IMG/VR virus record: IMGVR_UViG_3300043409_000928 | Span: 124,001 to 188,000 of that record | Strand: one strand, 5' to 3' | Length of the DNA: 64,000 bases | In this document: one piece after another, positions 45,557 through 64,000 of the stretch | Numbering within the stretch: position 1 is the first letter of the stretch | Layout of the letters: each line of letters starts with the position of its first letter | Program-made: the position numbers and the translations under genes | The notes under the pieces: generated by a model | Seen by the model: only the letters and a program-made list of their open reading frames with translations | What the model was told of the DNA's origin: nothing | Databases searched by the model: none

Positions 45557-45584
45557 ATAATGGCTCCATTTACTTTATGTATAT

Positions 45585-45613
45585 ATTATACTGTTATTTA
45601 GGCTTTTGGTCAA
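45585..45613 (-). promoter_or_regulatory. sigma70 promoter
   Basis: TTGACC-17nt-TATAAT preceded by AAAAAATCAGG. Confidence 0.75.
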
Positions 45614-45938
45614 CCTGATTTTTTATCAAATCTGGACCTGACAAGTCCCAAATCATAGCCACTTGTGGATCCCTGAACCAAATAGATTGCTTTGGTATAA
45701 AATCCCAATCCAGTCGCTTCAATCCTTGTTCTCTGGCCCATTTGGTAACTTCATTAATTGTGGCATTGGTTGGGTAAGATCGGACGGACCAGCTCTTCCT
45801 TTGTTCGCGGAGCCACTCGCTAACATCAGATGGGGCAGGGGGCTGATCCGCCCAAACTTGGCGGGCTTCTGAGCCATACATTATTTCAAGTACGGCCCAG
45901 TTCCGTTGTCTCTTACTCGTCTGTGAGTAAGTTGGCAT
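45594..45938 (-). CDS. Hypothetical protein
   Basis: ORF between MoxR and VWA; true start uncertain (possibly 45881). Confidence 0.45.
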   Translation of the reverse strand: MPTYSQTSKRQRNWAVLEIMYGSEARQVWADQPPAPSDVSEWLREQRKSWSVRSYPTNATINEVTKWAREQGLKRLDWDFIPKQSIWFRDPQVAMIWDLSGPDLIKNQVDQKPK

Positions 45939-52314: not shown

Positions 52315-53184
52315 TCACTTGCCCCAACCATTGGACCAAATGTCAACATGCAACCTGGGACTATAACGATAGCCTCTGGCCAGTGCTTCATCAGCAATGT
52401 GTCTTGTGTTAGAAAAGTATGCTTTGTCTGTGCCGCCTACCGGCATCACATAAACTTGTCCACCAAAGCCTGCGGCACGGTATTCACTTACTGCTTGGTC
52501 TACTTCTTTAAAGTCCATGATGTTATCAATTACAAATTTTAAATAGGTGTAACCAAGAGTTTGGTATTCAACAACTACACCTGGCTTAATGGCATCTGAC
52601 CACTTCTCACCACTGGAAGTCAGCTTGGGGCTAACACTGAATGTAAGATAGTCTCGGTCTCGGCCAAACCTTGTCCATTCTTCAAACAGATAGGTATGAA
52701 AGTCATCATGCAACTTCTGAGTACCATTTGTTTCAAATGTCAAATTGGCCAAGTCACTCATACGGCTATTGCTTAACAATGCAGGATACAATTGTTGCCA
52801 GCCCAGCAAGGGCTCACCGCCTGTGATGACCAAATGTACATCATTGCCATTGTTCTGTTCCCAGTGATTGTTGGGAGTTAGATCCAGCATAGCATCAACA
52901 CTTTGTTCAACACTGTAGTTAGGACTTAGATGTTTGAATGCAGGATGCCAACTGGCGTAACTGTCACAACCGGTATTGGCCAGTGGTAGATCATTAAAGG
53001 TTGGATATAGGTGTACTACCTTGCCAATGTCATCTGGCTCTGTGGTCTTTTCACCTGTGGGCAATCCAAAGCCTGCACACTTAAAGTTACAACCAAATGT
53101 TCTAAAGAACACACTGGGTACGCCAACAAAGCGACCTTCGCCTTGTGCGCTGTAGAATACTTCGCTTACTTTAAATTCATTCAT
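52315..53184 (-). CDS. queE: 7-carboxy-7-deazaguanine synthase (radical SAM)
   Basis: VSEVFYSAQGEG..VG.PSVF.R.FGCN..C; GCDS; VITGGEP; FETNGT; SVSPK; SPRLHVDIW. Confidence 0.9.
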   Translation of the reverse strand: MNEFKVSEVFYSAQGEGRFVGVPSVFFRTFGCNFKCAGFGLPTGEKTTEPDDIGKVVHLYPTFNDLPLANTGCDSYASWHPAFKHLSPNYSVEQSVDAMLDLTPNNHWEQNNGNDVHLVITGGEPLLGWQQLYPALLSNSRMSDLANLTFETNGTQKLHDDFHTYLFEEWTRFGRDRDYLTFSVSPKLTSSGEKWSDAIKPGVVVEYQTLGYTYLKFVIDNIMDFKEVDQAVSEYRAAGFGGQVYVMPVGGTDKAYFSNTRHIADEALARGYRYSPRLHVDIWSNGWGK

Positions 53185-53449
53185 ATATACTAGACCATTT
53201 CTTTAGTTTCTCAAACTTGGCTTGCTTTGCGGCTTCCATGCCTTCAACTGTTACTACATTTAACGATTGTAACAGGTCTACCATGGCAAGTAAATCACCA
53301 ATTTCACCTTCTAAGTGCTGTGCATTAGTTAGCGGCTTGCCTGGCTTCATATTGTCCAAGCCAAAACGATTGCATTTGCTAACGGCCTGAATCACCTCAG
53401 CACATTCTTCACTTAGAATGTTCATTACTTCGTATAGTTTATTGTCCAT
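53177..53449 (-). CDS. MazG-like NTP pyrophosphohydrolase
   Basis: EECAEV...LEGEIGDL. Confidence 0.75.
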   Translation of the reverse strand: MDNKLYEVMNILSEECAEVIQAVSKCNRFGLDNMKPGKPLTNAQHLEGEIGDLLAMVDLLQSLNVVTVEGMEAAKQAKFEKLKKWSSIYE

Positions 53450-54339
53450 TATACCTCCAATACTATGTTAGGGTTCCAGCCTGTGTCTTCGCTGTAACCA
53501 TTATGATGATAGCCTCGTGGGTTACATACCACCCTTGTCTCACCAATCTCATAATCAAACGGATGATGAGTATGTCCATGTGTCCACAATTTAATTTGCG
53601 GGTGATCCAAGATAAACTCACTCAACTCACTGTGGTAGCCACCGTTCATCAATTTATCGTTTCCATACATTGGATGACAACTTTGAAAACTTGGAGTATG
53701 ATGTCCAACTACCACAACCTTTTTGTCCTTGTGTTCTTGCACAATGTGTTTGATATAGCCCAGTGTCTTATCGTGACGAATAGCAACATCCAACGCACTC
53801 ATGGTGGCAAAACTTCTTTTATCGTTACGGATGATACGAAAGTCGTTCATCATACCTTCAATGGCATGCATGGTCAGCGGATCACGCCGGTTCATATCAG
53901 TCCATAAGGTACCACCTACAAACACTACATCAGAGACTTCACCAGTTTTGCGATTTCTATCTTGAATAATTTTTGTATCGTTTTCTAACATATAGATGTT
54001 AGGGTACCGGGCTAGTTCCTCACGCATATAGTCAATGCCCGCAAAGAACTTACCGTTGTAAAATTCGTGATTACCCATAATATAAATCACATGGGGGAAC
54101 TGAAAACTGCAACGCTTGAAAAAATCTCTAAAACGCTGTGCGGCCTGCTGTCTGCGACCCAGTCCAGTACTGTTGGCAATGGCCGCTTGATCCGTAGTAT
54201 TAGCAGGCTCGGGGTGGTCGTGCAGGTCCTGGGCGATACAAATGTCGCCACCTAAGATTAGAACATCACAGTTGTCATCGTTATTAATATAAACATCTGA
54301 GAATTCTAAATGTAAATCACTAACCAGCTTTATCTTCAT
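53449..54339 (-). CDS. Calcineurin-like metallophosphoesterase
   Basis: SDLHLE; GGDI; GNHE; GHHTP; HGHTH. Confidence 0.9.
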   Translation of the reverse strand: MKIKLVSDLHLEFSDVYINNDDNCDVLILGGDICIAQDLHDHPEPANTTDQAAIANSTGLGRRQQAAQRFRDFFKRCSFQFPHVIYIMGNHEFYNGKFFAGIDYMREELARYPNIYMLENDTKIIQDRNRKTGEVSDVVFVGGTLWTDMNRRDPLTMHAIEGMMNDFRIIRNDKRSFATMSALDVAIRHDKTLGYIKHIVQEHKDKKVVVVGHHTPSFQSCHPMYGNDKLMNGGYHSELSEFILDHPQIKLWTHGHTHHPFDYEIGETRVVCNPRGYHHNGYSEDTGWNPNIVLEV

Positions 54340-54613
54340 TGTCGTCTTCTAGTTTTGCTATTGAATTAAGACCGCTTACTGGAATACCATCCTCATCAAC
54401 AATCGCAAAGCCATCAAATATAAAACCAGCGCCTTTGCAGAAATCTGAAAACGCTTGTAAAATTTCTTCAAGATTCTCGTGACTGTGATCTAAGATAAGT
54501 TTTCTAGTACCATCATTGTAGCATATTAACCATTGTGTGTCAAGCGAATGTTTCTCAATATCGTTCATAGAACGCAATGCTTTTTTAATTGAGTCCCAGT
54601 CGTTAGTTGCCAT
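54320..54613 (-). CDS. Hypothetical protein
   Basis: 97-aa acidic ORF. Confidence 0.45.
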   Translation of the reverse strand: MATNDWDSIKKALRSMNDIEKHSLDTQWLICYNDGTRKLILDHSHENLEEILQAFSDFCKGAGFIFDGFAIVDEDGIPVSGLNSIAKLEDDNEDKAG

Positions 54614-55400
54614 CGGGTCTTATTTCTGCATTAAGATTCAATACTGCGCGGGCCAAATCAACATGAACTCCAGCTTTGACCAATGCAGTTTCAAAAGTCT
54701 GCATGTCTTTGGGAAAACACTTGCCACCAAATCCTGCTTGTCCATCTGGACCGGGACTTTGCCAATGACTTGCACCTAATCGGCCTTCATTAGCAAGCAA
54801 CTGACTAACGACATCATACGAAATATTATATTTTTCGCACAACATTCTAACTTGATTTGCAAAAATAACCTTGGTTGACAAGAAAGCGTTGGTGCTAAGT
54901 TTTGCAACCATTGCTTCAACTGGATCAGTAATAACAAGCTTGCCTGTATAGGTTGATTCAAACAAAGAAGAAAATTCTTCAGCACGATCGCCACCAAGTA
55001 CAACCATTGGTGGAGCAATACTATCTGCTTGCCAGGTCGCTTCTCGAATATACTCTGGCCACATAATAAGATTTTCACCTAGTTGTGTTAACAGCATAAT
55101 TGCACTTTCAACGCCAATGGTACTGCGAACCACTACCGGTCCAGTATATCCTTTGCCAAATGCATAGTTAATAGCGTTATCAAGATTTGCAGTATCGTTT
55201 TCTGGCAGATCTAAAGAAGTATTTAGATTGGAATTAACACATACAACAACATAGTCAACACCAAGCCACTGACTATCTTCTAACACAAGGTCCTTGTACG
55301 GATCGTTAAACAAGATTTCAAGATCTTGGTTGTGATGTTTAAGAAACATCTCGGTGGACTGTCCAACTGTTCCTTTTCCTAAAATTACAATTTTGGTCAT
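54603..55400 (-). CDS. ugd: UDP-glucose/GDP-mannose 6-dehydrogenase, short form lacking the C-terminal domain
   Basis: GKGTVG; RST; PEY.RE; KLSTNAFL..K..FAN; GFGGKCFPKD. Confidence 0.85.
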   Translation of the reverse strand: MTKIVILGKGTVGQSTEMFLKHHNQDLEILFNDPYKDLVLEDSQWLGVDYVVVCVNSNLNTSLDLPENDTANLDNAINYAFGKGYTGPVVVRSTIGVESAIMLLTQLGENLIMWPEYIREATWQADSIAPPMVVLGGDRAEEFSSLFESTYTGKLVITDPVEAMVAKLSTNAFLSTKVIFANQVRMLCEKYNISYDVVSQLLANEGRLGASHWQSPGPDGQAGFGGKCFPKDMQTFETALVKAGVHVDLARAVLNLNAEIRPDGN

Positions 55401-56161
55401 TTTTCTCTCAATACATAGTTGGGGTATTTTACCATACTGGCATCTAATAATGCTTCAAGCCTATCAATATCAACCCAACCCTTTACCACTACCAGAATCT
55501 TTCTGTATTTTGGATCAAAGTCGGCACCATGCAAAAAGTTTTCGTTATTCCATGCAAATGCATTTGTATCACTTGGCAGTTTTACATACATTCTTCCATC
55601 CAGTGGCACAGGCACTTTAGAATTTGGTTGATATTTTTCTTTAGAGCACAACCAAAATGTTTCTGTTGGATTTTTGTCATCTAACATAATTCTAATTTCG
55701 GTGGGGAAAAACATTTTCTTATCTAAGAATGTTGGCATGTTTCCATCAAAATGAGGAGGAATATTAATGTGAGCACTCCAACATCTAATAGATCTAATTT
55801 TGGCAAACGGCATCAACTCAAAAATTGATTTTACATAGTTAGGTTGCGAGTCGGCTAACTCTTGGCAAACTTTAGTCCTCCATGCCGCATTATCTAATAA
55901 TGTTTCGTCTTCATACATTGCCAGCCCATCCCAGTGTGTTGTATGCATTTTAGGTTCTGACACACCAACTGCACCACGATCAATATGCTGGCGATCTACT
56001 CTAACCAATTCTTGATTCCAGACATGCCAAAATGCATCCGGCGAATCTAATTCAAATTTTGGCATTGCCAATGGCAGTCCTGCAATATCCTTATACTTTT
56101 CATTTAGTCTTGGACATTCGGATAATTTTATTAATTTTATTAAATCATTTTCATTATACAT
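55397..56161 (-). CDS. 2OG-Fe(II) dioxygenase-like protein
   Basis: IPPHFDG...FAWNNENFLHGA...RKILV. Confidence 0.5.
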   Translation of the reverse strand: MYNENDLIKLIKLSECPRLNEKYKDIAGLPLAMPKFELDSPDAFWHVWNQELVRVDRQHIDRGAVGVSEPKMHTTHWDGLAMYEDETLLDNAAWRTKVCQELADSQPNYVKSIFELMPFAKIRSIRCWSAHINIPPHFDGNMPTFLDKKMFFPTEIRIMLDDKNPTETFWLCSKEKYQPNSKVPVPLDGRMYVKLPSDTNAFAWNNENFLHGADFDPKYRKILVVVKGWVDIDRLEALLDASMVKYPNYVLREK

Positions 56162-56484
56162 TATCTTTCCAACAAGTGGCCTTTGTTTTTAACATCTTTA
56201 AATTCTTCAGCAGTATCAAGTGGCGCCTTACTTCTAGTAATAACAGGCCAAATTTTGCTAAGTTCAATGTTGATTGGTAGCCAGGGTTTTTGTTCTTCTG
56301 TCATGTCTCGATCTGCAACAATAGCATCCACTGGACATTCAGGAATACAAACGCCACAGTCAATACATTCGTCAGGATCTATAACAAGAAAGTTTGGCCC
56401 TTCTTTAAAACAATCAACAGGGCATACTTCAACACAATCAGTATACTTGCATTTAACACAACTTTCAGTCACGACATAAGTCAT
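56161..56484 (-). CDS. fdxA: 7Fe ferredoxin (FdxA/FdI type)
   Basis: [18 protein letters not shown]...[20 protein letters not shown]. Confidence 0.95.
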
Positions 56485-56485
56485 T

Positions 56486-56899
56486 TTATATCTTCCAATT
56501 CTGTTCTATGCGTTCTTTGTTGTTGGGTCTGTTACCAGTTAACCCCAACATACCTCTATATGTCTGCCAAGCTTCCTGTACCATTGGATCTTCATGTCCG
56601 CCGGTAGGAAACAAATCAGCCCATACAGCATTTTCTGGCATCATATTTCTATATGTGCCAAAGTTACGAGGTTGGTGTATCTTCCCTTCTCGGAACAGCA
56701 CACTGGCCACACCTTGACACGCTGTCTCGTCTAATCCTTCTAAGTATCCAGTGCGATACATATATTCATTCACAATTGGAACCAGTTGTTCCTGTGTTTC
56801 AAATCGTGTGCCAGATACAATAACTACAACATCGTTGATATCAACAACATCTGTAACAATGTCACGAATACAACGGCCTAGGCTAAATCCCACTTTCAT
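56486..56899 (-). CDS. Hypothetical protein
   Basis: Start reassigned to [10 protein letters not shown] after AGGAG. Confidence 0.55.
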
Positions 56900-57401
56900 A
56901 TGTGCTCCTTGTCCACCAAGACTCCCACGGGAAGTCGATCCATACATCTTTTTCAACTTTGTTAACACTCATACCACAATAGTCAGTATACTGGTCGCTA
57001 GCCTCATTGTCAACCAAAACGGCTAAACGAACTGATTTATGCCAATATTTATCAATAAAATCTGGCTCTACGCCAGCTACAGCACCGGCCCAATCTTCCA
57101 TGAGCCATGCTTGAGTTGCTCCTGAATCATTGATGTCATCAACTAATAAAATATTCTTACCAGCAAGCACTTCTTCTGGTGCCCATAACAACGACTCAGT
57201 ATCTTTGAAATCTCTAAGCGAGACTTTAACTGTGGCATGTGGAATCTCCAGGTACTGACTGAGCATGTTACTGAGAATTAATCCACCACGATCAATGCCA
57301 ATGATAAGATCTGGTCGCCAACCACTTACATTGATATCACGAATAATAGTATGGGCCAGATATTCTATATCGCCCCAGGACAATGAACATTTTTTTAACA
57401 T
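56883..57401 (-). CDS. Type I phosphoribosyltransferase (xanthine/guanine PRT-like)
   Basis: IIGIDRGGL; LLVDDINDSGAT; WIDFPWE. Confidence 0.88.
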   Translation of the reverse strand: MLKKCSLSWGDIEYLAHTIIRDINVSGWRPDLIIGIDRGGLILSNMLSQYLEIPHATVKVSLRDFKDTESLLWAPEEVLAGKNILLVDDINDSGATQAWLMEDWAGAVAGVEPDFIDKYWHKSVRLAVLVDNEASDQYTDYCGMSVNKVEKDVWIDFPWESWWTRSTYESGI

Positions 57402-57934
57402 TATTTTTCTTCCGACGAATCTGGGCCGCCTAATAGTTTTTCCATTGCTTTATACTCGTTGTACATTTCCTTGAGCATGGGATACTTTTCATGCATTTCA
57501 AAGTTTGGTGTAATGATTAGTAAACGCTTCTTTAATGTAGTCATCATATCAGCCAGCTCGTCAATATCAATTTCGCTCTTGGCTGTCTTGATAGTGTTCT
57601 TACCATACATGGTAGTGTCTGCAGAAAGAATTGAAGCACTGGTATTGTAACTGATGTTGCCAGTCAATGATGATCCTATAGGACCTATAGTATATGCCCC
57701 GCCCATAGTATTTCCAGCACTTCCACTGCCAGTAATTGTAAGGCCAGTACTGAGTCCGATATTAGTTAGGTCAATACTGTCCATGCCAATATCGCATAGG
57801 TCTCCGGTAAAAGTAATGGCAGAAACATCCTGTGCAATGACGCCAACAGTTGTATTGGTCTCGTCCCATTTAAACTCAACAGGATCTATAGTAGACAGCA
57901 CATCTTTCAATTTGTTTTTAGTATCATCGTTCAT
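57401..57934 (-). CDS. Hypothetical protein with low-complexity G/T/S middle
   Basis: 177-aa ORF. Confidence 0.5.
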   Translation of the reverse strand: MNDDTKNKLKDVLSTIDPVEFKWDETNTTVGVIAQDVSAITFTGDLCDIGMDSIDLTNIGLSTGLTITGSGSAGNTMGGAYTIGPIGSSLTGNISYNTSASILSADTTMYGKNTIKTAKSEIDIDELADMMTTLKKRLLIITPNFEMHEKYPMLKEMYNEYKAMEKLLGGPDSSEEK

Positions 57935-57937
57935 AGT

Positions 57938-58816
57938 TCACCGTGGAGCAAATTCTTGTTGCATTTTAATGTTATCAAAGAATTCTTTCTTTGTACCTGC
58001 ATCGTCCTTGAACGAACCTTTGAGTACAGTGGTCTGTGTTAAACTACTGTGTGCCATAATGCCACGATTCTCACAGCATCCATGCGTGGCCTGAATGTAC
58101 ACGCCTAAATTTTCTGCTCCGGTGGCTTTTTGTATTTCCCTAGCAATGTCATTACAAAGTTCCTCTTGTAAAGTACCACGCCTAGCACACCACTGAGCAA
58201 TGCGAGTATACTTAGATAAACCAATGAGCTTGTTGGCAGCGATGATTCCAATATAAGCCACGCCTGTAACAGGCTGGTGATGATGACTGCACATACTGCG
58301 AAGTTCACTACGTACAACCAACATGCCTTCATAACGGTCCTTTGTATCATTTGGAAATGCTGTTGCGTCTGGTGCAGTAACATATCGTCCTTCCATTACT
58401 TCGTTAAAATACATCTTAGCCAATCGCTTGGCTGTGCCTTTGCTATTAGGATCGTTCTCACGATCAATCAGCAGTCGATCCAACACTAGTTCAAATGCTT
58501 CTGCGGCTTCGTTGATCAGTTGTTCTTTATTTTCTTCGGTGACGTATTCGCTAATATTGTCGCCTGCCCAAAATCTCTTACCTTCACGTTTCATTTTGAA
58601 ACGTAGATGATCGCCTAGGTAGGCTTCTTTGTAATCTTTGTCGTCATCACCCTGCTGTTCTGCACCAGCAAGTGCGTTTCTTATTTCTTGATCTCTTTTC
58701 AAGAGTTCAGGTGGTGTTGGATTTCCCATATTATTCTCCGCAGGATGTAAAATTGGATCTGGTTTAAATGTTCTATCTACTTTGTCTGCGTGAATAGGAA
58801 CGAATTTGTTTTGCAA
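57938..58816 (-). CDS. folE: GTP cyclohydrolase I with N-terminal extension
   Basis: SMCSHH; IGLSK..RI; LQE.L; HGCCENRG. Confidence 0.93.
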   Translation of the reverse strand: MQNKFVPIHADKVDRTFKPDPILHPAENNMGNPTPPELLKRDQEIRNALAGAEQQGDDDKDYKEAYLGDHLRFKMKREGKRFWAGDNISEYVTEENKEQLINEAAEAFELVLDRLLIDRENDPNSKGTAKRLAKMYFNEVMEGRYVTAPDATAFPNDTKDRYEGMLVVRSELRSMCSHHHQPVTGVAYIGIIAANKLIGLSKYTRIAQWCARRGTLQEELCNDIAREIQKATGAENLGVYIQATHGCCENRGIMAHSSLTQTTVLKGSFKDDAGTKKEFFDNIKMQQEFAPR

Positions 58817-58857
58817 TGTTTTTTCTCCGAGTTACTGTCGTGGATGACACTTTGTTT

Positions 58858-58886
58858 ATTGTAACAGATAGTTAGTCATTAAGCAA
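58858..58886 (-). promoter_or_regulatory. sigma70 promoter for folE
   Basis: TTGCTT-17nt-TACAAT with TG extended -10. Confidence 0.55.
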
Positions 58887-59192
58887 TACCTCGCTTGGCC
58901 AACTTAGAAGATAAAGCATAAGGTCCTCTGATCTTTTAAAATGTACTATAATGGTAATGTTCATTTCTGCCAAGTATTGCTGTTGCCAACTATCTACCTT
59001 TCCCAACTTACGCCAATTAAAACTATAACCTTTGTAGTCAGTTGCTGACCAACGATTGTTACAATTATCAACTAGCCACCGCCTAATTTCTTTAAGTGTG
59101 TTTACAGCAACTACTGTTTTCGCCCCATATTGATTAGCCACCAATGTGTCGAGCATACAACTCACTTTTACGCAGATCGTCCCAGCCACCAA
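58872..59192 (-). CDS. Hypothetical protein
   Basis: Trp-rich ORF; start uncertain. Confidence 0.4.
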   Translation of the reverse strand: MVAGTICVKVSCMLDTLVANQYGAKTVVAVNTLKEIRRWLVDNCNNRWSATDYKGYSFNWRKLGKVDSWQQQYLAEMNITIIVHFKRSEDLMLYLLSWPSEVLLND

Positions 59193-59382
59193 TTAACGCA
59201 CCATCAATGATGATTTGCGGAACTGTTCTGGCAGTTGGTACTGCTTCTAATAAATTTTCACGAGTAAAGCCATTATGGCCTACTCGGTGCTCAGTAAAGG
59301 ACAAGCCTTTACTGTTCAACCAGGCCTTGGCCTGATCGCAATAGGGGCAATGGTCCTTGCTATAAACTACAATTGTTGTCAT
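59134..59382 (-). CDS. Glutaredoxin
   Basis: CPYC; TVPQI; IGG. Confidence 0.92.
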   Translation of the reverse strand: MTTIVVYSKDHCPYCDQAKAWLNSKGLSFTEHRVGHNGFTRENLLEAVPTARTVPQIIIDGALIGGWDDLRKSELYARHIGG

Positions 59383-59543
59383 ACTCCTGATCCGTCTTCA
59401 AATAAATTCTTTTCGTATTCGTCTAGTGCTGTTTGGTACTGCTCTTCTGTTAGGCCATGCCAGCCACAGCACTTGCCATCTGGACTACGACCGCAACCAC
59501 ATCTACCAAATTCTTCTGGATTCTCTCTTACTCTGATTTGCAT
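59379..59543 (-). CDS. CDGSH-like iron-sulfur protein
   Basis: CGCGRSPDGKCCGWH; start reassigned to MQIRV. Confidence 0.65.
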   Translation of the reverse strand: MQIRVRENPEEFGRCGCGRSPDGKCCGWHGLTEEQYQTALDEYEKNLFEDGSGV

Positions 59544-59544
59544 A

Positions 59545-59973
59545 TTATGCCTTAGATATATCGTAGGTCTGTGCAAAGATGTCTTTCTTCACTGCACCGT
59601 AATCGCCGGTACCGTGACGCACAATGTAATCATTGCCTGTGGTATAGTTTAAGTCGCCCCAACTGGTATGGATAACACCATCATGGTCAGCAAGTTTGGC
59701 CGTCTTAGGAATCTTCTTAGGAGTAGCAATGCCGTTACCTTGATCATCTTTGAGTGTGTTAAACTTCTCAGCAGTAATAGGATACTGCTCACCTTTGGGA
59801 CCAGTCATGATATAATGGCCTGCTTCATATTGAACAGGACCTTCAAGAGTCTGTACAGTTCCAGCTTGCTGTGCAACTTCATACTTTTCTTGTGCAGGCT
59901 TTTTGAATGTATCAAAGCCACCTTGCTTGAACCAAGTATCGTTGATGCCGTTTTCTAATTCATTGATTTTCAT
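59545..59973 (-). CDS. PGDYG-like protein with internal duplication
   Basis: TLEG.....G.YI..G..GE.YP, then TSWG......DYIV..G.GDYG. Confidence 0.55.
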   Translation of the reverse strand: MKINELENGINDTWFKQGGFDTFKKPAQEKYEVAQQAGTVQTLEGPVQYEAGHYIMTGPKGEQYPITAEKFNTLKDDQGNGIATPKKIPKTAKLADHDGVIHTSWGDLNYTTGNDYIVRHGTGDYGAVKKDIFAQTYDISKA

Positions 59974-60392
59974 TTTTTTTCCTTTTCTGCTTCATAAACT
60001 CTTTTACGAAGGCTACTGGATGAGAAACTATGGGCGCGACCGTTAAAGTATAAATCAATGTTTCGCTTGTGACAAATTTCGCGGCCGGTAAACTCTTTAC
60101 CCTCATATTCCACACCTAAAATGCGTACATTAAGTGGTAGTGTTAAAAGTAAATCTTCTAGATCTTTTTCTGTATTGTAGACCCAAATTTCATCAACATA
60201 CTTATTCCCACGCAGTTGCATTTGACGTTCAATGATTGTTTGTACAGGTTTATTTTTTGTTGTTCTGTCCAGAGTTGGATCATTTTGTAATCCAACAATT
60301 AGATAATCACATTGCGTCTTTGCTTCTTGTAACATGGCCACATGCCCTGCATGAAGTAAGTCAAAGGTCGAACAAGTAAAACCTATTTTCAT
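59970..60392 (-). CDS. Glycerol-3-phosphate cytidylyltransferase-like (TagD/RfaE-II)
   Basis: FDLLHAGH; YLIVGL; SSS.LR; start reassigned. Confidence 0.85.
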   Translation of the reverse strand: MKIGFTCSTFDLLHAGHVAMLQEAKTQCDYLIVGLQNDPTLDRTTKNKPVQTIIERQMQLRGNKYVDEIWVYNTEKDLEDLLLTLPLNVRILGVEYEGKEFTGREICHKRNIDLYFNGRAHSFSSSSLRKRVYEAEKEKK

Positions 60393-61384
60393 GCCCGATC
60401 CTGATACAATGACGAGTTGTACCAGTCCCATGCGGTCTTAACAATGTTATCAACTCCACTTGCTTCTGGTTTCCATTTTGTGGTTTTTGTAAAGCTATAT
60501 GCGCTTGCTACCAAGGTAGCAGGATCACCTTCTCTGCGTGGTCCAGTATGTATTAATGGAACTTCTCCTGTGATCTTTTCGACACTAGAAATAATTTCTC
60601 TAATACTAATTCCTTTACCAGTGCCAAGGTTAAACTCTTTACTGGTACCCTTATCTAAACCAGATCCATACAAGCTTCCTAGGTAATGTGCATTTGCAAT
60701 GTCTTCTACGTGTAGATAATCACGCACACATGTTCCATCATGTGTATCATAATCAATGCCATTTAAAGTGAATACGTCCTTGTTAATTATACTTTCAATA
60801 ACCCGAGCAATCAGGTGTGTGGCCTGTTTTAATTGTCCATGTCTTACTTGGCTATCGGCACCAGAAGCATTGAAGTATCTAAATGATATAGTGTTAATAT
60901 TATATGCTTTTGCACAATCACGCAACAGTTGTTCTACCATTAACTTGCTATGTCCGTACGGGCTAATTGGTAAAGTTGGACTATTTTCTTTTAGTAAACT
61001 TTCTGAGGGGTTACCGTATACTGCGGCACTACCAGAAAATATGAAAGTGCCTTCCCATTTAATGCCAGCAAGCTGTACCATAAACCTAGCAGTCTGTCCA
61101 ACATTATTCATATAATAGACAGCCGGATTTGTAACACTTGGACCTACTAAACTTGTGCCAGCACAATGTACAATTGTAGCTGGCTTTAGGTCTAAGATTT
61201 GGTGCAGGAACATTGCATTTGTAAAATCACCAGGGATATATGAATCACAAATATCTCTAATCCAAGAAGATGTATTACTACGATCGCACCCAAGGACTGA
61301 ATATCCCATGTCTTTAAATTTTAATACTGTTTGTCCACCAATGTATCCACCGGCTCCAGTAACAGCAACCCATTTTTCAGCCAT
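60389..61384 (-). CDS. galE: UDP-glucose 4-epimerase
   Basis: GAGGYIG; YG.SK; RYFNA.GA; GTCVRDYLHV.DIA.AH; FNLGTG.G; start reassigned. Confidence 0.88.
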   Translation of the reverse strand: MAEKWVAVTGAGGYIGGQTVLKFKDMGYSVLGCDRSNTSSWIRDICDSYIPGDFTNAMFLHQILDLKPATIVHCAGTSLVGPSVTNPAVYYMNNVGQTARFMVQLAGIKWEGTFIFSGSAAVYGNPSESLLKENSPTLPISPYGHSKLMVEQLLRDCAKAYNINTISFRYFNASGADSQVRHGQLKQATHLIARVIESIINKDVFTLNGIDYDTHDGTCVRDYLHVEDIANAHYLGSLYGSGLDKGTSKEFNLGTGKGISIREIISSVEKITGEVPLIHTGPRREGDPATLVASAYSFTKTTKWKPEASGVDNIVKTAWDWYNSSLYQDRA

Positions 61385-62595
61385 TAATACTTTGCTCCAG
61401 CAACATGATCTCGATAGCGGTTGCCTGAACGATTCCATTGTGCGGCCTTACATTCCATGCCGCCTTCAGCAACGGTGCCAGCAGTTTCCATAATGTCGCA
61501 GATGCGATCAATCGTTCCATTGTTCCAGTCACTGATCTTACCTTGACGAATATGAGCTCCGGACAATTGTATACGAAGCTTTTGCATTGCATCTTCTATG
61601 CTCCATGGCACATACATTCTTGTGTGATCATTTGCAAATGTCTCAGGAAAGCTACGATAAGCAGGATACAGCACATTACAACCCAATGCATCAGCTTCAC
61701 TTACAGTATTGCTAACCCAGTCTTGTAACGCACAGTTAAACAGCACACGGCTGTCATTTACAATGTTATAGTAGTCGTTCTTTTGCAAATCTTTATAAAT
61801 CTTTAACTTGCCGTCTGCTTCCATCTGCCAAGCACGTTCAATATATTTAGGATTGTTGCTACGCAACGGTCCACCACTTAGTACTGCAAACTCAACTGGA
61901 TAGTCTGCATGTTGCTTGTGCCAAGCCTCGATCAAGTCCATAAAGAAGTCTGGTTGCTTCTCTTGGTCAAACCTTGCGGCAAATACAACACGATTGGCTC
62001 GCTCCGGCCAAGATTTTAGTTTGTTATCAACGCGACCAAGTACTTCTTCTTTACCAAATGCCAATCCTGAAATATTATAGATAGGAGCACTCCAACCTGC
62101 AATACGCATGTGGGCTACCATCTCTTCATTTGTGGCCAGTACACCTGTAACAAATTGATTGACCATTTGTTCATACAATCCCATCCACTTACTCATGCCC
62201 CATACATGAACAAAGTCATCTGGGTCAATTGCTTGTGCAAGACAACGAACAAAAATTCTTGGACGTAAGTTATGTGGAACCTGATTGAGAATGTAAGGCA
62301 AACTTTCAATACCTGGTTGGAACATGTCTTCAAAGTAGATGACATCTTCATTTGTAACATCACCACTACGCATCATCTGCACCAGGTTCATCATTTGACT
62401 CATACCAAAGTAGCTTCGACCATGTGCGTCTAACACTTGGCCTACACTGATTGCTCGGGTATTGTCAATTGTGCTACCAGGCACAATAACATAATTAATG
62501 TTGCGGCGTTTGAATACTGCTTCATTCCAATCTTGGAGTTGAAGAGTATACCGACCTTCATAGGGTTCTAGACCCATGTAGTAAAGCTTACGCAT
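61384..62595 (-). CDS. GT-B fold glycosyltransferase
   Basis: VFAARFDQEKQP; EADALGCNVLYP. Confidence 0.7.
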   Translation of the reverse strand: MRKLYYMGLEPYEGRYTLQLQDWNEAVFKRRNINYVIVPGSTIDNTRAISVGQVLDAHGRSYFGMSQMMNLVQMMRSGDVTNEDVIYFEDMFQPGIESLPYILNQVPHNLRPRIFVRCLAQAIDPDDFVHVWGMSKWMGLYEQMVNQFVTGVLATNEEMVAHMRIAGWSAPIYNISGLAFGKEEVLGRVDNKLKSWPERANRVVFAARFDQEKQPDFFMDLIEAWHKQHADYPVEFAVLSGGPLRSNNPKYIERAWQMEADGKLKIYKDLQKNDYYNIVNDSRVLFNCALQDWVSNTVSEADALGCNVLYPAYRSFPETFANDHTRMYVPWSIEDAMQKLRIQLSGAHIRQGKISDWNNGTIDRICDIMETAGTVAEGGMECKAAQWNRSGNRYRDHVAGAKY

Positions 62596-63056
62596 TACTG
62601 CTCCTGGCGGTCTAAACGATTAGGCATACAACACATGCCATCTGCACTATGCATGGTCTCAGAACACCATGCGCTCTTGTAAAAGCCCACATGGATCTTG
62701 AGTGCCTTGCTAGCACGATCCTCTGCACTTTGGATATTGACCGTATATGTAAAGCTACGGTCACCACTTGCCTCGTGAATACGAGATTCTGGCATATTGA
62801 TGGTATAACCATAAATGTAGTTGCCACGCACCAAGTCCATTAGGTACTTGTTGTAAAAGTCCAAAGGCAAGTGCCCAAGGTCTTCTGTTAATACACCGTC
62901 ATATAACTCACTAATTTTTAGCAAGTCAAACTTGATGTGGTTAAGGTTAAGACCAGTCCGACGTGGCTGGAATTGTGGATTATAGTTTCCACGATCTTTA
63001 CGTTCAAAACGAACACGAGTATTAAGAGTACTGTTTAAGGCATCCATTTTCGCCAT
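62595..63056 (-). CDS. Hypothetical protein
   Basis: Likely start MAKMDAL; lies between queD-like and GT-B genes. Confidence 0.5.
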   Translation of the reverse strand: MAKMDALNSTLNTRVRFERKDRGNYNPQFQPRRTGLNLNHIKFDLLKISELYDGVLTEDLGHLPLDFYNKYLMDLVRGNYIYGYTINMPESRIHEASGDRSFTYTVNIQSAEDRASKALKIHVGFYKSAWCSETMHSADGMCCMPNRLDRQEQ

Positions 63057-63399
63057 CCTCTGAAATGTCAATCCAAACTTTACGATCTGTGTACTTTGAT
63101 GAAATTTGACCATATAGATCATCTGCCATCATTTCGCAGGACTTGTGATTCAATTCTAGTGTTCCTTGGGTATATAAATTTTCCAACCAACGCTTGAACT
63201 GAATAAACTCAACATCTCGATCGTCATGAAAGATTTCGAGATACACTTTAAAGTGGAACATGTGTCGATGAGGATGTCCTAAAAAAGAAACATCATACTC
63301 GTCACCTGTTGCCAACTTGGGATCCGTAAGTGCCGCCGGATACCTGTGGATTCCTTCCTTGCGAAAGGTAACCCAAATCATGTCTTGTGACATAACCAT
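63022..63399 (-). CDS. queD: QueD/6-pyruvoyl-tetrahydropterin synthase-like T-fold protein
   Basis: EGIH, GHPHRH.F, SCEMMA, V.ISEDG; folE and queE nearby. Confidence 0.6.
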   Translation of the reverse strand: MVMSQDMIWVTFRKEGIHRYPAALTDPKLATGDEYDVSFLGHPHRHMFHFKVYLEIFHDDRDVEFIQFKRWLENLYTQGTLELNHKSCEMMADDLYGQISSKYTDRKVWIDISEDGENGCLKQYS

Positions 63400-63402
63400 T
63401 CC

Positions 63403-63579
63403 TTATTTAATAATACCATCTTTTTTTGCGTAAGCCCACAACTTGTAATCAATGTCTTTTGACAATTTTACCAAATCTTCTAAATTTTTATTGATCTGTT
63501 TTAAAAGATGTATAACAACTTCTGATTCAGACTTTGCAGGCTCAACAGCAAGTAAATTTTTAGCAGTAGGCTTGTTCAT
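63403..63579 (-). CDS. 58-aa protein missed by ORF track; paralogue of the upstream gene
   Basis: MNKPTAK...LEDLVKLSKDIDYKLWAYAKKDGIIK. Confidence 0.65.
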   Translation of the reverse strand: MNKPTAKNLLAVEPAKSESEVVIHLLKQINKNLEDLVKLSKDIDYKLWAYAKKDGIIK

Positions 63580-63587
63580 ATACGCAA

Positions 63588-63800
63588 TTAATCAATGTAG
63601 TTGTTAGCTTTTAAATAAACCCAAATCTTCCAATCAATTGCCTGGAGATGCTTTACTACTGCATCTAACTTTGCATTTAATTCAGCATTGCTAGGAGAAG
63701 CAGAACTCTCCTGTGCGGCATCATCAGCTACAACTGATTTAGGAGTTGGACGCTTGTTTGGTTTGTTAAAATTACCAACTTTAACTTCTTCTTCGCTCAT
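63588..63800 (-). CDS. Small protein with C-terminal IDWKIW motif
   Basis: AGGAA RBS; LDAVVKHLQAIDWKIWVYLK. Confidence 0.6.
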   Translation of the reverse strand: MSEEEVKVGNFNKPNKRPTPKSVVADDAAQESSASPSNAELNAKLDAVVKHLQAIDWKIWVYLKANNYID

Positions 63801-63813
63801 TTTATTTCCTTAG

Positions 63814-64000
63814 TTAATTAACAGGGTTGTCGCCTTGGTAGGCACTCCAGGGTGTAAATACTTCTCGGTCCATAAGTTTATGTAACGAGTGGCACCACAC
63901 ACCAGGATTGGTTTGATTGAAGCCTTTGTCATCAATCTTAATCGTTGTATTATAGTTAAGCAGTTTAGTATAGGGTAGTTTGACCGAAACCATTGGAATT
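63814..64000 (-). CDS. C-terminal part of a hypothetical protein entering the window
   Basis: Manual translation IPMVSVKLPY...TNPGVWCHSLH...FTPWSAYQGDNPVN*. Confidence 0.6.
   Translation of the reverse strand, partial: IPMVSVKLPYTKLLNYNTTIKIDDKGFNQTNPGVWCHSLHKLMDREVFTPWSAYQGDNPVN

What the first reader, a model, noticed from the sequence alone, without database searches (positions are those of the whole stretch)
52315..64000. 7-deazaguanine pathway interleaved with a glycosyltransferase, a purine PRTase and MazG
Seen: folE, queD-like and queE in one minus-strand region with a GT-B transferase (two genes from queD), galE, ugd, a xanthine/guanine-type PRTase and a MazG next to queE. No queC or dpdA/TGT is recognisable in the window. 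Established: FolE-QueD-QueE makes CDG, the precursor of preQ0-type DNA modifications that protect phage DNA. Inference: the base could be salvaged by the PRTase to a nucleotide for polymerase incorporation, and/or be glycosylated, giving an unreported modified guanine.
Basis: partly seen in the sequence, partly recalled or inferred. Interest (0 to 1): 0.6.

Follow-up and report, generated by a model that had tools for sequence, protein, structure and literature searches.

The report
Deazaguanine DNA-modification island with glycosyltransferase
A giant freshwater phage carries a gene island for replacing guanine in its DNA with a 7-deazaguanine base; the island always travels with a sugar-transferring enzyme and a purine-salvage enzyme, which hints at a sugar-decorated DNA base that nobody has yet identified.

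Summary
The genes are real, but two points need correcting. The "queD-like" gene (63022-63399) is DpdL, the QueD paralogue proposed to decarboxylate CDG; it carries the LxxxHRHxF signature. The true QueD lies 82 kb away.

A DpdA does exist. It is a 522-aa protein encoded 0.9 kb beyond the window's end, between DpdL and the T4-type DNA polymerase. HMM libraries miss it, but it has a tRNA-guanine-transglycosylase fold, the motifs GDSGGFQ and FDCASP, and profile homology to the validated DpdA2.

No QueC is found in the 285-kb contig. The locus is therefore a DpdA-dependent, DpdL-type (phiST/dDG-like) guanine-replacement system.

Two things look new:
- **GT4 glycosyltransferase plus GalE.** The pair sits beside DpdL in 74 and 75 of 80 related viral contigs. 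A GT4 homologue adjoins DpdL or DpdA in six or more separate isolate lineages, including PA5oct, whose DNA has a chemically unidentified modified G. The GT4 is more conserved than the DNA polymerase.
- **XGPRT-like PRTase.** Among 50,697 phage records it matches only BUCT-ZZ01 and the phiST group. A separate direct comparison finds a weak PA5oct homologue.

A glycosylated deazaguanine is plausible but unproven. This is a new variant of a known kind.

The parts
52315..53184 (-). QueE-like radical-SAM enzyme (CPH4 to 7-carboxy-7-deazaguanine, CDG). Its only three Cys are spaced C32-x3-C36-x36-C73.
   Evidence: phrog_2076, 2.4e-51. Weak QueE NCBIfam hits, all below cut-off. 45% identical to BUCT-ZZ01 QueE. 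Sequence read.
53177..53449 (-). Small MazG-type nucleoside-triphosphate pyrophosphohydrolase, adjacent to QueE.
   Evidence: PF03819, 6.9e-6, over cut-off. phrog_4856, 2e-22. The MazG-QueE pair is kept in 22 of 80 loci, a count limited by flank length.
53449..54339 (-). Calcineurin-like metallophosphoesterase; role unknown.
   Evidence: PF00149, 9.8e-10; phrog_1649, 5e-54.
54320..54613 (-). Conserved 97-aa protein of unknown function.
   Evidence: No family hit. Found in 14 related loci.
54603..55400 (-). Short UDP-glucose-6-dehydrogenase-like protein. It has the Rossmann motif and the catalytic GGKCFPKD motif but no C-terminal UDP-binding domain.
   Evidence: PF00984, 3.9e-17; TIGR03026, 1.6e-29, covering profile positions 77-295 of 413. 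Motifs read.
55397..56161 (-). Conserved 254-aa protein of unknown function.
   Evidence: No hit in Pfam, PHROGs or NCBIfam. Present in 24 related loci.
56161..56484 (-). DUF3470-type ferredoxin. Inferred to be the electron donor for the radical-SAM QueE.
   Evidence: PF11953, 1.1e-14; PF00037, 1.9e-10. Present in 34 of 80 loci.
56486..56968 (-). Conserved 160-aa protein of unknown function.
   Evidence: No family hit. Present in 22 related loci.
56883..57401 (-). XGPRT-like 6-oxopurine phosphoribosyltransferase.
   Evidence: PF00156, 1.6e-14. PDB relatives are purine PRTases and E. coli XGPRT. Invariant RGG, D88-D89-x-x-D92-S-G-x-T and WIxFPWE. Among 50,697 phage records it matches only BUCT-ZZ01 and the phiST group.
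57401..57934 (-). Conserved 177-aa protein of unknown function between FolE and the PRTase.
   Evidence: Only a sub-threshold Peptidase_S74 hit. Present in 26 related loci.
57938..58816 (-). GTP cyclohydrolase I (FolE), with an N-terminal extension of about 90 aa or a later true start.
   Evidence: PF01227, 3.5e-38; phrog_2197, 2e-44.
59134..59382 (-). Glutaredoxin.
   Evidence: PF00462, 1.5e-15.
59970..60431 (-). Sugar-phosphate nucleotidyltransferase (RfaE domain II / TagD-like).
   Evidence: PF01467, 1.3e-11; TIGR02199, 1.6e-19 (below cut-off); phrog_7878, 3e-32.
60389..61438 (-). UDP-glucose 4-epimerase (GalE); lies directly downstream of the GT gene in most (not all) of the 75 of 80 related loci that hold it.
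   Evidence: phmmer hits to solved GalE structures, 1e-63 to 1e-40. Synteny.
61384..62595 (-). GT4-type (GT-B, retaining) glycosyltransferase of a virus-only family. It is coupled to DpdL.
   Evidence: AF2 model, pLDDT 79. Foldseek: MshA, BshA, PimA, WaaG, BGluT at E 3e-10 to 1e-8. At least 597 relatives in IMG/VR, 70-89% identical among the 80 best kept. 69% identical to the BUCT-ZZ01 protein next to its DpdL. Atlas: virus-only clusters, some carrying PF20706 GT4-conflict.
62595..63122 (-). Conserved protein of up to 175 aa between DpdL and the GT; function unknown. The ORF's 5' end overlaps DpdL, so the true start is probably later.
   Evidence: No family hit. Present in 37 related loci.
63022..63399 (-). 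DpdL: a QueD-like T-fold protein and the proposed CDG decarboxylase.
   Evidence: phrog_17812, 7e-32, the same family as phiST DpdL at 4e-69. blastp to phiST CGPG_00067, 1.7e-12. Motif FLGHPHRHMF matches LxxxHRHxF (PMC10516641).
63588..63800 (-). Conserved 70-aa protein of unknown function.
   Evidence: Present in 30 related loci; no family hit.
63814..64000 (-). 3' end of a 173-aa gene that runs off the window (genome 187814-188335). The next gene upstream, outside the window at genome 188322-189890, is the 522-aa DpdA. After it come a 239-aa protein and the T4-type DNA polymerase.
   Evidence: ORFs in L086. The 173-aa protein matches ACP17's cluster protein h132 at 3.5e-10. DpdA: alignment A1 motifs; AF2 pLDDT 86; all top 50 Foldseek hits are tRNA-guanine transglycosylase, E about 2e-7; hhalign to DpdA2, 92.8%. 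Polymerase: phrog_262, 1e-190.

Best explanation
The region is the larger part of a DpdA-dependent, DpdL-type 7-deazaguanine DNA-modification island. It belongs to a freshwater T4-like jumbo phage (285-kb contig).

Proposed pathway:
1. FolE, QueD (encoded 82 kb away) and QueE, probably reduced by the neighbouring ferredoxin, make 7-carboxy-7-deazaguanine (CDG).
2. With no QueC, the pathway does not go on to preQ0.
3. DpdL is predicted to convert CDG, in phiST to 7-deazaguanine.
4. The 522-aa TGT-fold DpdA, encoded between DpdL and the DNA polymerase just past the window end, exchanges guanine in phage DNA for the deaza base after replication.

Three further roles are inferred, not shown:
- The XGPRT-like PRTase most likely returns the guanine released by the exchange to GMP and GTP, refuelling FolE.
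- The GT4 glycosyltransferase, fed by GalE (UDP-galactose), belongs to the system and adds a hexose to the DpdL product, to the base in DNA, or to an intermediate.
- MazG trims a (d)NTP pool.

Shown here: the gene identities, the DpdA fold and motifs, the conserved synteny, and the absence of QueC. Inferred: every chemical step and the identity of the final base.
For: Gene identities.

DpdL: same PHROG as phiST DpdL and the LxxxHRHxF motif.

DpdA:
- Invariant GDSGGFQ, HFLG and FDCASP in 27 sequences.
- Confident model whose 50 best PDB matches are all tRNA-guanine transglycosylase.
- hhalign probability 92.8%, E 4e-7, to a DpdA2 alignment that includes the experimentally validated VH7D enzyme, with the catalytic motifs in register (PMC10516641).
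- 52% identical over its full length to PA5oct EST35_0316.

Experimental link: PA5oct DNA resists G-containing restriction enzymes, interpreted as 'modified G in GA/GG' (PMC12191111). That fits motif-directed exchange.

No QueC, QueF or Pfam TGT in the contig. No QueC in the complete genomes of BUCT-ZZ01, PA5oct, ACP17 or Phosso.

Synteny Pol-p239-DpdA-p173-DpdL-GT-GalE-...-FolE-PRT-...-MazG-QueE recurs in about 70 of 80 IMG/VR loci.

GT coupling:
- A GT4 homologue adjoins DpdL and/or DpdA, in different gene orders, in BUCT-ZZ01, ACP17, BUDD/X1, BCSR5, Phosso and the PA5oct group.
- In the isolate search seeded with BUDD's GT-like protein (18 records matched), none was a Vibrio or Stenotrophomonas (Menderavirus) phage, the groups that hold DpdA2-like proteins without DpdL; the window's own GT matched only 4 records.
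- In distant loci (polymerase 57% identical) the GT is 73% and DpdL 69% identical, against 33% for DpdA.
- No thymidylate-synthase-family hydroxymethylase is present to supply hmC or hmU as an alternative sugar acceptor.

PRTase: the 6-oxopurine signature is retained, and the protein is restricted to DpdL-type phages.
Against: - No chemistry was measured for this phage or any close relative.
- DpdL's decarboxylase activity is itself only predicted. Cui et al. could not reconstitute it for phiST or ACP17.
- 7-deazaguanine offers no obvious hydroxyl for O-glycosylation, so the GT's acceptor is unexplained.
- The GT's nearest structural neighbours act on small molecules, not DNA.
- Several DpdL phages (phiST, RHph_I1_18, Ahp1) lack a detectable GT, so the GT is not obligatory for DpdL function.
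- Most of the 80 loci belong to related lineages, so their synteny is partly inherited and not independent evidence.
- A PRTase together with MazG in phages with fully substituted DNA also fits a nucleotide-level route.
- The contig is only 86% complete.
Confidence: 0.7

Rival explanations
1. The PRTase couples the deaza base (CDG or 7-deazaguanine) to PRPP, as TubE does in tubercidin biosynthesis. Kinases and ribonucleotide reductase then yield the deaza-dGTP, which the phage polymerase incorporates while MazG destroys dGTP. DpdA would be auxiliary, patching residual G or acting on tRNA.
For: - This PRTase subfamily is found among isolates only in DpdL-type phages, including the phiST group, whose DNA is about 100% dDG.
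- In phiST the PRTase gene lies two genes from the ribonucleotide reductase large subunit gene.
- A MazG sits in the cluster here and in phiST.
- The island adjoins the DNA polymerase gene.
- DpdA3 and DpdL activity was never reconstituted.
- From established knowledge: 7-deaza-dGTP is a good polymerase substrate, and other fully substituted phage genomes are made at the dNTP level.
Against: - A conserved, intact DpdA with catalytic motifs is present in every lineage examined.
- The PRTase keeps D92 of the DDxxDSG motif. From recalled HGPRT/XGPRT enzymology, that residue acts on purine N7, which a 7-deaza base lacks.
- PA5oct's restriction pattern was read as motif-specific, which is typical of DpdA.
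- ACP17 and BUDD have DpdL and the GT but no PRTase in their clusters.
Confidence: 0.15
2. The sugar genes (GT4, GalE, ugd-like, nucleotidyltransferase) do not act on DNA or on the deaza base. They would instead glycosylate something else: a pterin derived from FolE's product (a cyanobacterial biopterin-glucoside or cyanopterin-type branch using the T-fold DpdL), a host envelope component, or a phage protein.
For: - The GT's structural neighbours use small-molecule acceptors. They include a tetrahydrobiopterin glucosyltransferase (9v0l, rank 10).
- FolE, the T-fold protein and the GT share an unusually high conservation level, distinct from QueE, QueD and DpdA.
- Some DpdL phages lack the GT.
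- 7-deazaguanine has no obvious acceptor group.
- The only isolate with a close GT (69% identity) infects Synechococcus elongatus PCC 7942, a pterin-glucoside producer (recalled knowledge).
Against: - The GT homologue is wedged between DpdA and DpdL in proteobacterial phages (ACP17, BUDD, BCSR5, PA5oct), in differing gene orders.
- The similarity to BGluT is no better than to other GT4 enzymes (11% identity).
- DpdL lacks the catalytic Cys of PTPS/QueD.
- GalE is a nucleotide-sugar epimerase, not a sepiapterin-reductase type of SDR.
- Related Atlas clusters carry the 'GT4 in conflict systems' family.
Confidence: 0.3
3. The TGT-fold enzyme and the que genes modify tRNA (queuosine- or archaeosine-type) and not DNA.
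For: The fold is that of tRNA-guanine transglycosylase. Older annotations of related phages assume a tRNA role.
Against: - No tRNA genes in the 64-kb window.
- Profile homology is to DpdA2, which inserts deazaguanines into DNA (PMC10516641).
- The gene lies within the replication module next to the polymerase.
- PA5oct virion DNA is restriction-resistant at G-containing sites.
- No QueC or QueF to reach preQ1.
Confidence: 0.03

Closest known systems
Cellulophaga phage phiST dDG system: FolE-QueD-QueE-DpdL-DpdA3-MazG (Cui, Hutinet et al. 2023, PMC10516641)
   Same: - CDG-level pathway without QueC.
- DpdL of the same PHROG and with the same motif.
- A MazG in the cluster.
- The same rare XGPRT-like PRTase subfamily elsewhere in the genome.
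   Different: - The DpdA here is 522 aa and shows no detectable similarity to the 259-aa DpdA3.
- phiST has no GT4 or GalE.
- phiST is an 80-kb non-T4 phage.
DpdA2 of Vibrio phage VH7D and relatives (phrog_10773; also ACP17, BUDD, BUCT-ZZ01, Menderavirus)
   Same: TGT-fold DNA transglycosylase encoded next to FolE and QueE in T4-like phages. Catalytic motifs align (hhalign 92.8%).
   Different: - The window phage's enzyme is not matched by phrog_10773 or Pfam TGT. It forms its own subgroup with PA5oct (52% identity).
- VH7D has QueC and QueF and makes preQ1-type bases. It has neither DpdL nor the GT.
Pseudomonas jumbo phage PA5oct deazaguanine locus (Iyer et al. 2021, PMC7824862; END-nuclease preprint, PMC12191111)
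   Same: - Same order: polymerase, p239-like, DpdA (52% identical), GT-like, DpdL (53% identical), PRT-like, QueE.
- Jumbo genome of about 287 kb.
- Experimental evidence for modified G.
   Different: - PA5oct's GT is only 21% identical.
- It has no full GalE, ugd-like or nucleotidyltransferase genes nearby.
- The chemical identity of its base is not reported in the papers I could read.
T-even phage hydroxymethylcytosine glucosylation (alpha- and beta-glucosyltransferases)
   Same: A GT-B enzyme using a UDP-sugar to decorate an already non-canonical base in a T4-like phage. This is the functional analogy if the GT acts on DNA.
   Different: - That system acts on a pyrimidine with a hydroxymethyl acceptor made at the dNTP level.
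- No hydroxymethylase family gene is present here.
- T4 GTs were not among the best structural matches.
Tubercidin/toyocamycin biosynthesis: GCH-I, QueD, QueE plus a PRTase acting on CDG or preQ0 (recalled from the literature, not tested here)
   Same: Co-occurrence of FolE, QueD and QueE with a phosphoribosyltransferase. This is a precedent for making a 7-deazapurine nucleotide from the free base.
   Different: - That pathway is a bacterial secondary-metabolite cluster with no DpdA.
- I had no reference sequences to compare.
- The phage PRTase looks like a standard XGPRT.

Membership tests
Phage 7-deazaguanine DNA-modification systems (Hutinet 2019; Cui 2023) | Enzymes for CDG synthesis: FolE, QueD and QueE. 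| tested here: met
   FolE and QueE are in the window. QueD (PF01242, 2.7e-14) is 82 kb away on the same contig.
Phage 7-deazaguanine DNA-modification systems (Hutinet 2019; Cui 2023) | A DpdA-family guanine transglycosylase (the signature protein). | tested here: met
   The 522-aa protein at genome 188322-189890 has a TGT fold, the motifs GDSGGFQ and FDCASP, and hhalign 92.8% to DpdA2. It is missed by Pfam TGT, DUF6610 and the DpdA PHROGs. It lies outside the window.
Phage 7-deazaguanine DNA-modification systems (Hutinet 2019; Cui 2023) | QueC (CDG to preQ0), for the preQ0/G+/preQ1 subtypes. | tested here: not met
   No PF06508 hit at E<=1. No tblastn hit to phage QueC or QueF. This places the locus in the CDG/DpdL subtype.
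Phage 7-deazaguanine DNA-modification systems (Hutinet 2019; Cui 2023) | A 7-deazaguanine derivative is actually present in virion DNA. | not testable with these tools
   Only indirect evidence: the relative PA5oct has restriction-resistant G sites.
DpdL (proposed CDG decarboxylase, phrog_17812) | T-fold QueD paralogue with LxxxHRHxF in place of CxxxHGH. | tested here: met
   phrog_17812, 7e-32. FLGHPHRHMF aligns with phiST, ACP17 and BUDD DpdL and differs from the QueD rows.
DpdL (proposed CDG decarboxylase, phrog_17812) | Decarboxylates CDG to 7-deazaguanine. | not testable with these tools
   The activity is unproven even for phiST and ACP17.
DpdA2 subfamily (phrog_10773) | Sequence membership in the family of the validated VH7D enzyme. 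| tested here: inconclusive
   Homology is seen by hhalign and weakly by blastp to ACP17 (E 0.003). There is no phrog_10773 hit at 0.01. It is better treated as a separate subgroup shared with PA5oct.
GT4 retaining glycosyltransferases (GT-B fold) | Two-Rossmann GT-B fold with a C-terminal nucleotide-sugar domain. | tested here: met
   Foldseek probability 1.0 to MshA, BshA, PimA and WaaG, TM 0.5-0.68. The Pfam Glycos_transf_1 hit scores 23.1 bits, below the 26.4 cut-off.
GT4 retaining glycosyltransferases (GT-B fold) | Identified donor and acceptor. | not testable with these tools
   A UDP-Gal or UDP-Glc donor is inferred only from the adjacent GalE. The acceptor is unknown.
6-oxopurine phosphoribosyltransferases (XGPRT/HGPRT) | Type I PRTase PRPP motif with the third Asp (DDxxD[ST]G) and an aromatic residue that stacks the base. 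| tested here: met
   D88, D89, D92, G94 and T96 are invariant; W154 and W159-E160 are nearly so. The best PDB relatives are purine PRTases and XGPRT. NCBIfam XGPRT scores 40.5 bits against a cut-off of 138, so it is not an equivalog.
Deazapurine PRTases of tubercidin/toyocamycin clusters (TubE/ToyH) | Sequence relationship and activity on CDG or preQ0. | not tested
The resemblance is recalled from the literature only.
Pteridine glycoside pathway (FolE, PTPS, sepiapterin reductase, BGluT/PgtA) | A PTPS with the catalytic Cys, a sepiapterin-reductase-type SDR, and a BGluT-like GT. | tested here: not met
   The T-fold protein lacks the Cys. The SDR is a GalE. The GT resembles BGluT no more than it resembles other GT4 enzymes.

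The most novel reading that the evidence does not exclude
The DpdL-GT4(-GalE) module makes a hexose-bearing 7-deazaguanine that DpdA places in DNA, or that is glycosylated in situ. That would be the first glycosylated purine known in any natural DNA. It would be widespread in freshwater T4-like and jumbo phages and shared with PA5oct, ACP17, BUDD and BUCT-ZZ01. The XGPRT-like PRTase would close a guanine-recycling loop, or alternatively feed a parallel nucleotide route.
Probability: 0.3. Interest if true: 0.85.

Novelty: new variant of a known kind. Interest (0 to 1): 0.6.

Why it matters
7-Deazaguanine DNA modifications are a major phage counter-defence, and their chemistry is still being catalogued. 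This locus adds four things.

- **A hidden DpdA subgroup.** A divergent DpdA that standard HMMs miss explains apparently 'DpdA-less' que clusters in jumbo and freshwater phages.
- **Two unexplained companion enzymes.** The GT4 glycosyltransferase is conserved more strongly than the DNA polymerase, and the XGPRT-like PRTase is rare. Their roles are not covered by the current pathway scheme. They may also account for the failed reconstitution of DpdL and DpdA in E. coli.
- **Ecological reach.** At least 597 viral contigs carry the GT. Lake metagenomes from 12 or more studies hold near-identical sequence, and RNA-library contigs cover the region.
- **Testability.** Cultured relatives exist (PA5oct, ACP17, BUDD, BUCT-ZZ01), so the chemistry can be tested directly.

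A sugar-bearing purine would be a new class of DNA base. It would matter for restriction and CRISPR evasion, for modification-dependent nucleases such as the END family, and for sequencing artefacts.

Tried and rejected
**Searches that found nothing**
- Megablast of the region against 50,697 phage records: no match.
- Pfam TGT, QueC and DUF6610, the phiST DpdA3 PHROGs (phrog_20335, phrog_19058), and blastp with phiST DpdA3 on the whole contig: all negative. This first suggested a DpdA-free system. That reading was rejected once the 522-aa neighbour was folded.
- Profile searches of PDB sequences with the DpdA, GT and p173 alignments: nothing usable.
- Pfam and PHROG scans of the 522-, 173-, 254-, 160-, 177- and 175-aa proteins: no hits. 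The 239-aa protein matched only phrog_12062, of unknown function.
- Atlas search with p173: no hit.
- The Phosso 'glycosylase' in the p173 position is not related to p173.
- Supplementary tables of Cui et al. are not held.

**Ideas considered and set aside**
- That the GT serves hmC or hmU glycosylation: no thymidylate-synthase-family gene is present.
- That the GT is a DpdA: it is a GT4 fold.
- A pterin-glycoside branch: kept as a rival, not adopted.
- A complex prediction between GT, DpdL and DpdA was not requested, because I do not claim that they bind.

**Procedural notes**
- The large representative search was not used; it is costly and the claims do not rest on absence of relatives.
- No alternative genetic code was used.
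- Read laying was given 3,612 letters.

Full report
**1. Context**

The window is bases 124001-188000 of a 285,304-bp IMG/VR viral contig, linear and estimated 86% complete. GC content is about 40%. The finding lies in a long minus-strand block. Near-identical sequence occurs in freshwater and lake metagenomes from at least 12 studies. Short contigs from four lake metatranscriptome libraries cover parts of the GalE-GT-DpdL stretch at 90-100% identity. This is weak evidence of expression, because DNA carry-over cannot be excluded.

**2. The observation**

- QueE-like radical SAM, 52315-53184: phrog_2076, 2e-51. There is no Pfam hit, and the three Cys are spaced C-x3-C-x36-C.
- MazG, 53177-53449, abutting QueE.
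- A metallophosphoesterase.
- A short ugd-like protein, 54603-55400: Rossmann motif and GGKCFPKD present, C-terminal UDP-binding domain absent.
- A DUF3470 ferredoxin.
- A purine PRTase, 56883-57401.
- FolE, 57938-58816.
- Glutaredoxin.
- An RfaE-II/TagD-like nucleotidyltransferase.
- A true GalE, 60389-61438: 1e-63 to solved UDP-glucose 4-epimerases.
- A GT-B protein, 61384-62595.

Three corrections are needed.

*The 'queD-like' gene is DpdL.* The gene at 63022-63399 has no Pfam PTPS hit even at E<=1. It belongs to phrog_17812, the family of phiST CGPG_00067 (DpdL). It carries FLGHPHRHMF. This is the LxxxHRHxF signature that Cui et al. use to separate DpdL from QueD's CxxxHGH.

*QueD is elsewhere.* The canonical QueD is at genome 269872-270411, 82 kb away.

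*A DpdA exists just outside the window.* See section 3.

**3. The hidden DpdA**

Searches of the whole contig with Pfam TGT, DUF6610, QueC and the phiST DpdA3 PHROGs were all negative. The lead came from isolates. The best QueE match, Synechococcus phage BUCT-ZZ01, has this cassette:

QueE - PRTase - x - QueD - FolE - 447 aa - 416 aa - DpdL-like - GT (69% identical to ours)

Its 416-aa protein is homologous to three others:
- ACP17's 424-aa protein;
- BUDD's annotated queuine tRNA-ribosyltransferase;
- the VH7D protein that Cui et al. validated as DpdA2.

ACP17's protein weakly matched an ORF just past the window end. I fetched genome 186001-200000. Read along the minus strand, the order there is:

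DNA polymerase (phrog_262, 1e-190) - 239 aa - 522 aa - 173 aa - 70 aa - DpdL

Evidence that the 522-aa protein is a DpdA:
- An alignment of 27 family members shows invariant GDSGGFQ, HFLG and FDCASP.
- The AlphaFold model is confident, with pLDDT 86.
- Its 50 best PDB matches are all tRNA-guanine transglycosylases, at E about 2e-7 and probability 1.0.
- hhalign against a DpdA2 alignment gives 92.8% probability (E 4e-7), with these motifs in register with ADSGGLQ, HxLGVGS and SYDSTTH.
- It is 52% identical over its full length to PA5oct EST35_0316.

The phage therefore does encode a DpdA, of a divergent subgroup that standard HMMs miss.

**4. Conserved anatomy**

The GT has at least 597 relatives in IMG/VR; the 80 best, which were fetched, are 70-89% identical to it. 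Counts among the 80 fetched loci:

| Neighbour | Loci (of 80) |
|---|---|
| DpdL upstream of the GT | 74 |
| GalE downstream of the GT | 75 |
| 522-aa DpdA | 71 |
| p173 | 70 |
| Polymerase | 59 |
| FolE | 63 |
| PRTase | 39 |
| QueE | 32 |
| QueD | 17 |

The lower numbers are limited by the 10-kb flanks. Five of the six loci without DpdL are cut at a contig end.

In the most distant loci the polymerase is 57% identical. Identities of the other proteins there:

| Protein | Identity |
|---|---|
| FolE | 81% |
| GT | 73% |
| DpdL | 69% |
| QueE | 47% |
| GalE | 46% |
| PRTase | 43% |
| DpdA | 33% |

So the GT and DpdL are held more tightly than the replicase and behave as a pair.

Independent lineages show the same coupling in other gene orders:
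- ACP17: FolE - h132 - DpdA - GT - DpdL - QueE.
- BUDD/X1 and BCSR5: GT - DpdA - x - QueE in both; DpdL sits between DpdA and QueE in BUDD, but about 2.7 kb upstream of the GT (next to QueD) in BCSR5.
- Phosso: polymerase - clamp - x - DpdL - GT - x - FolE ... QueE.
- PA5oct group: polymerase - p239-like - x - DpdA - GT - DpdL - x - x - PRT-like - QueE.

In the isolate search seeded with BUDD's GT-like protein, no GT homologue appeared in the Vibrio or Stenotrophomonas (Menderavirus) phages, which hold DpdA2-like proteins without DpdL; the window's own GT matched only four records. Some DpdL phages lack it: phiST, RHph_I1_18 and Ahp1. BUCT-ZZ01, PA5oct, ACP17 and Phosso have no QueC in their complete genomes, and neither does our contig.

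**5. The glycosyltransferase**

- Pfam hits are sub-threshold.
- The model (pLDDT 79) is a GT-B/GT4 fold. The nearest solved structures are MshA, BshA, a mannosyltransferase, WaaG, PimA and a tetrahydrobiopterin glucosyltransferase, at E 3e-10 to 1e-8 and about 10-15% identity.
- The protein-atlas neighbours are virus-only clusters. Some carry PF20706, 'GT4 in conflict systems'. ACP17's homologue also touches that family.
- The adjacent GalE points to a UDP-hexose donor. This is inference.
- No thymidylate-synthase-family hydroxymethylase is present, so hmC or hmU is not available as an acceptor.

**6. The PRTase**

- It is a type I purine PRTase, closest to archaeal and bacterial purine PRTases and to E. 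coli XGPRT.
- Across 14 family members the RGG loop, D88-D89-x-x-D92-S-G-x-T and WIxFPWE are invariant or nearly so.
- From recalled enzymology of HGPRT and XGPRT, the third Asp acts at purine N7 and the Trp stacks the base. This is the signature of enzymes that use ordinary 6-oxopurines.
- Among 50,697 phage records, tblastn finds this protein only in BUCT-ZZ01 and in the phiST group. A weak homologue is present in PA5oct.
- In phiST the gene lies two genes from the ribonucleotide reductase large subunit gene.
- It is thus a marker of DpdL-type phages.

**7. Mechanism**

*Best-supported reading (0.7 for the core).*
1. GTP is converted by FolE, QueD and QueE to CDG.
2. DpdL processes CDG, in phiST to 7-deazaguanine.
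3. DpdA swaps the base for guanine in DNA after replication.

Support comes from the conserved DpdA and from its homology to a validated DNA transglycosylase. Support also comes from PA5oct, whose DNA resists G-containing restriction enzymes in a pattern read as GA/GG-specific and is attacked by G-modification-sensing nucleases.

*PRTase.* I consider guanine salvage the most likely role, at about 0.45. Each exchange frees one guanine, and GMP to GTP refuels FolE. Deaza-base activation is the alternative, at about 0.15-0.3.

*GT and GalE.* I consider membership of the system more likely than not, at about 0.55-0.6. The acceptor is unknown. Candidates are the DpdL product, its exocyclic N2, the electron-rich pyrrole carbon, a CDG ester, or the base once in DNA.

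*Ferredoxin and MazG.* The ferredoxin probably reduces QueE. MazG's substrate is open.

None of these steps was measured.

**8. Rivals**

- The nucleotide route.
- A non-DNA acceptor for the sugar genes, for example pterin glycosides. The FolE, T-fold and GT4 trio with equal conservation is suggestive. However, DpdL lacks the PTPS Cys, the SDR is a GalE, and the GT sits between DpdA and DpdL in proteobacterial phages.
- tRNA modification.

Each is set out with its evidence in the Rival explanations section.

**9. Novelty**

[quoted passage not shown] In the searchable literature I found no description of any of the following:
- the GT4/GalE coupling;
- the DpdL-specific PRTase;
- the chemical identity of the base in this group.

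I file the locus as a new variant of a known kind. It carries a testable chance of a new, sugar-bearing purine in DNA.

Noticed in passing
window 43406-44284 (-): A second radical-SAM protein (292 aa). It has weak hits to QueE-like phrog_2076 (8e-5) and to a generic radical-SAM PHROG, and lies 8 kb downstream of QueE on the same strand. Function unknown.
   Followed up: partly
L004-L083 compared with the window: In distant relatives the GT (73%), DpdL (69%) and one FolE type (81%) are more conserved than the DNA polymerase (57%). DpdA has drifted to 33%. FolE falls into two identity classes (about 35% and about 80%), which suggests either cassette exchange or two FolE types.
   Followed up: partly
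L088 (Stenotrophomonas phage Moby) 2454-3704: An annotated inositol-3-phosphate synthase sits between FolE and QueC/DpdA2/QueE in the Menderavirus cluster. This is another sugar-type enzyme embedded in a deazaguanine island.
   Followed up: no
L002 (BUCT-ZZ01) 17778-19121: BUCT-ZZ01 has a second, weakly GT1-like protein (447 aa) directly upstream of its DpdA. It therefore has two candidate glycosyltransferases in one deazaguanine cassette.
   Followed up: no
L092 (Rhizobium phage RHph_I1_18) 6402-7226: In this DpdL phage, which lacks the GT, a macro-domain (Appr-1-p processing) protein directly follows DpdL.
   Followed up: no
window 54603-55400 with 55397-56161 and 54320-54613: The ugd-like gene is flanked by conserved unknown ORFs of 254 and 97 aa with 4- and 11-base overlaps. 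It lacks the UDP-binding domain, so it may oxidise something other than UDP-glucose.
   Followed up: partly
window 13282-21888 (+): A very large ORF (2,868 aa) lies within a plus-strand block of large genes (5-38 kb), presumably virion or tail-fibre genes. It was not examined.
   Followed up: no
window 44348-47013 (-): An ATPase (phrog_1297, MoxR/CobS-like) is next to a 402-aa protein of phrog_1314. This resembles the CobS/CobT-like pairs of aquatic phages.
   Followed up: no
L001 2061-2771 (genome 270471-271181): An Rv2179c-like 3'-5' exoribonuclease lies next to the distant QueD. Its BUCT-ZZ01 homologue lies next to that phage's GT.
   Followed up: no
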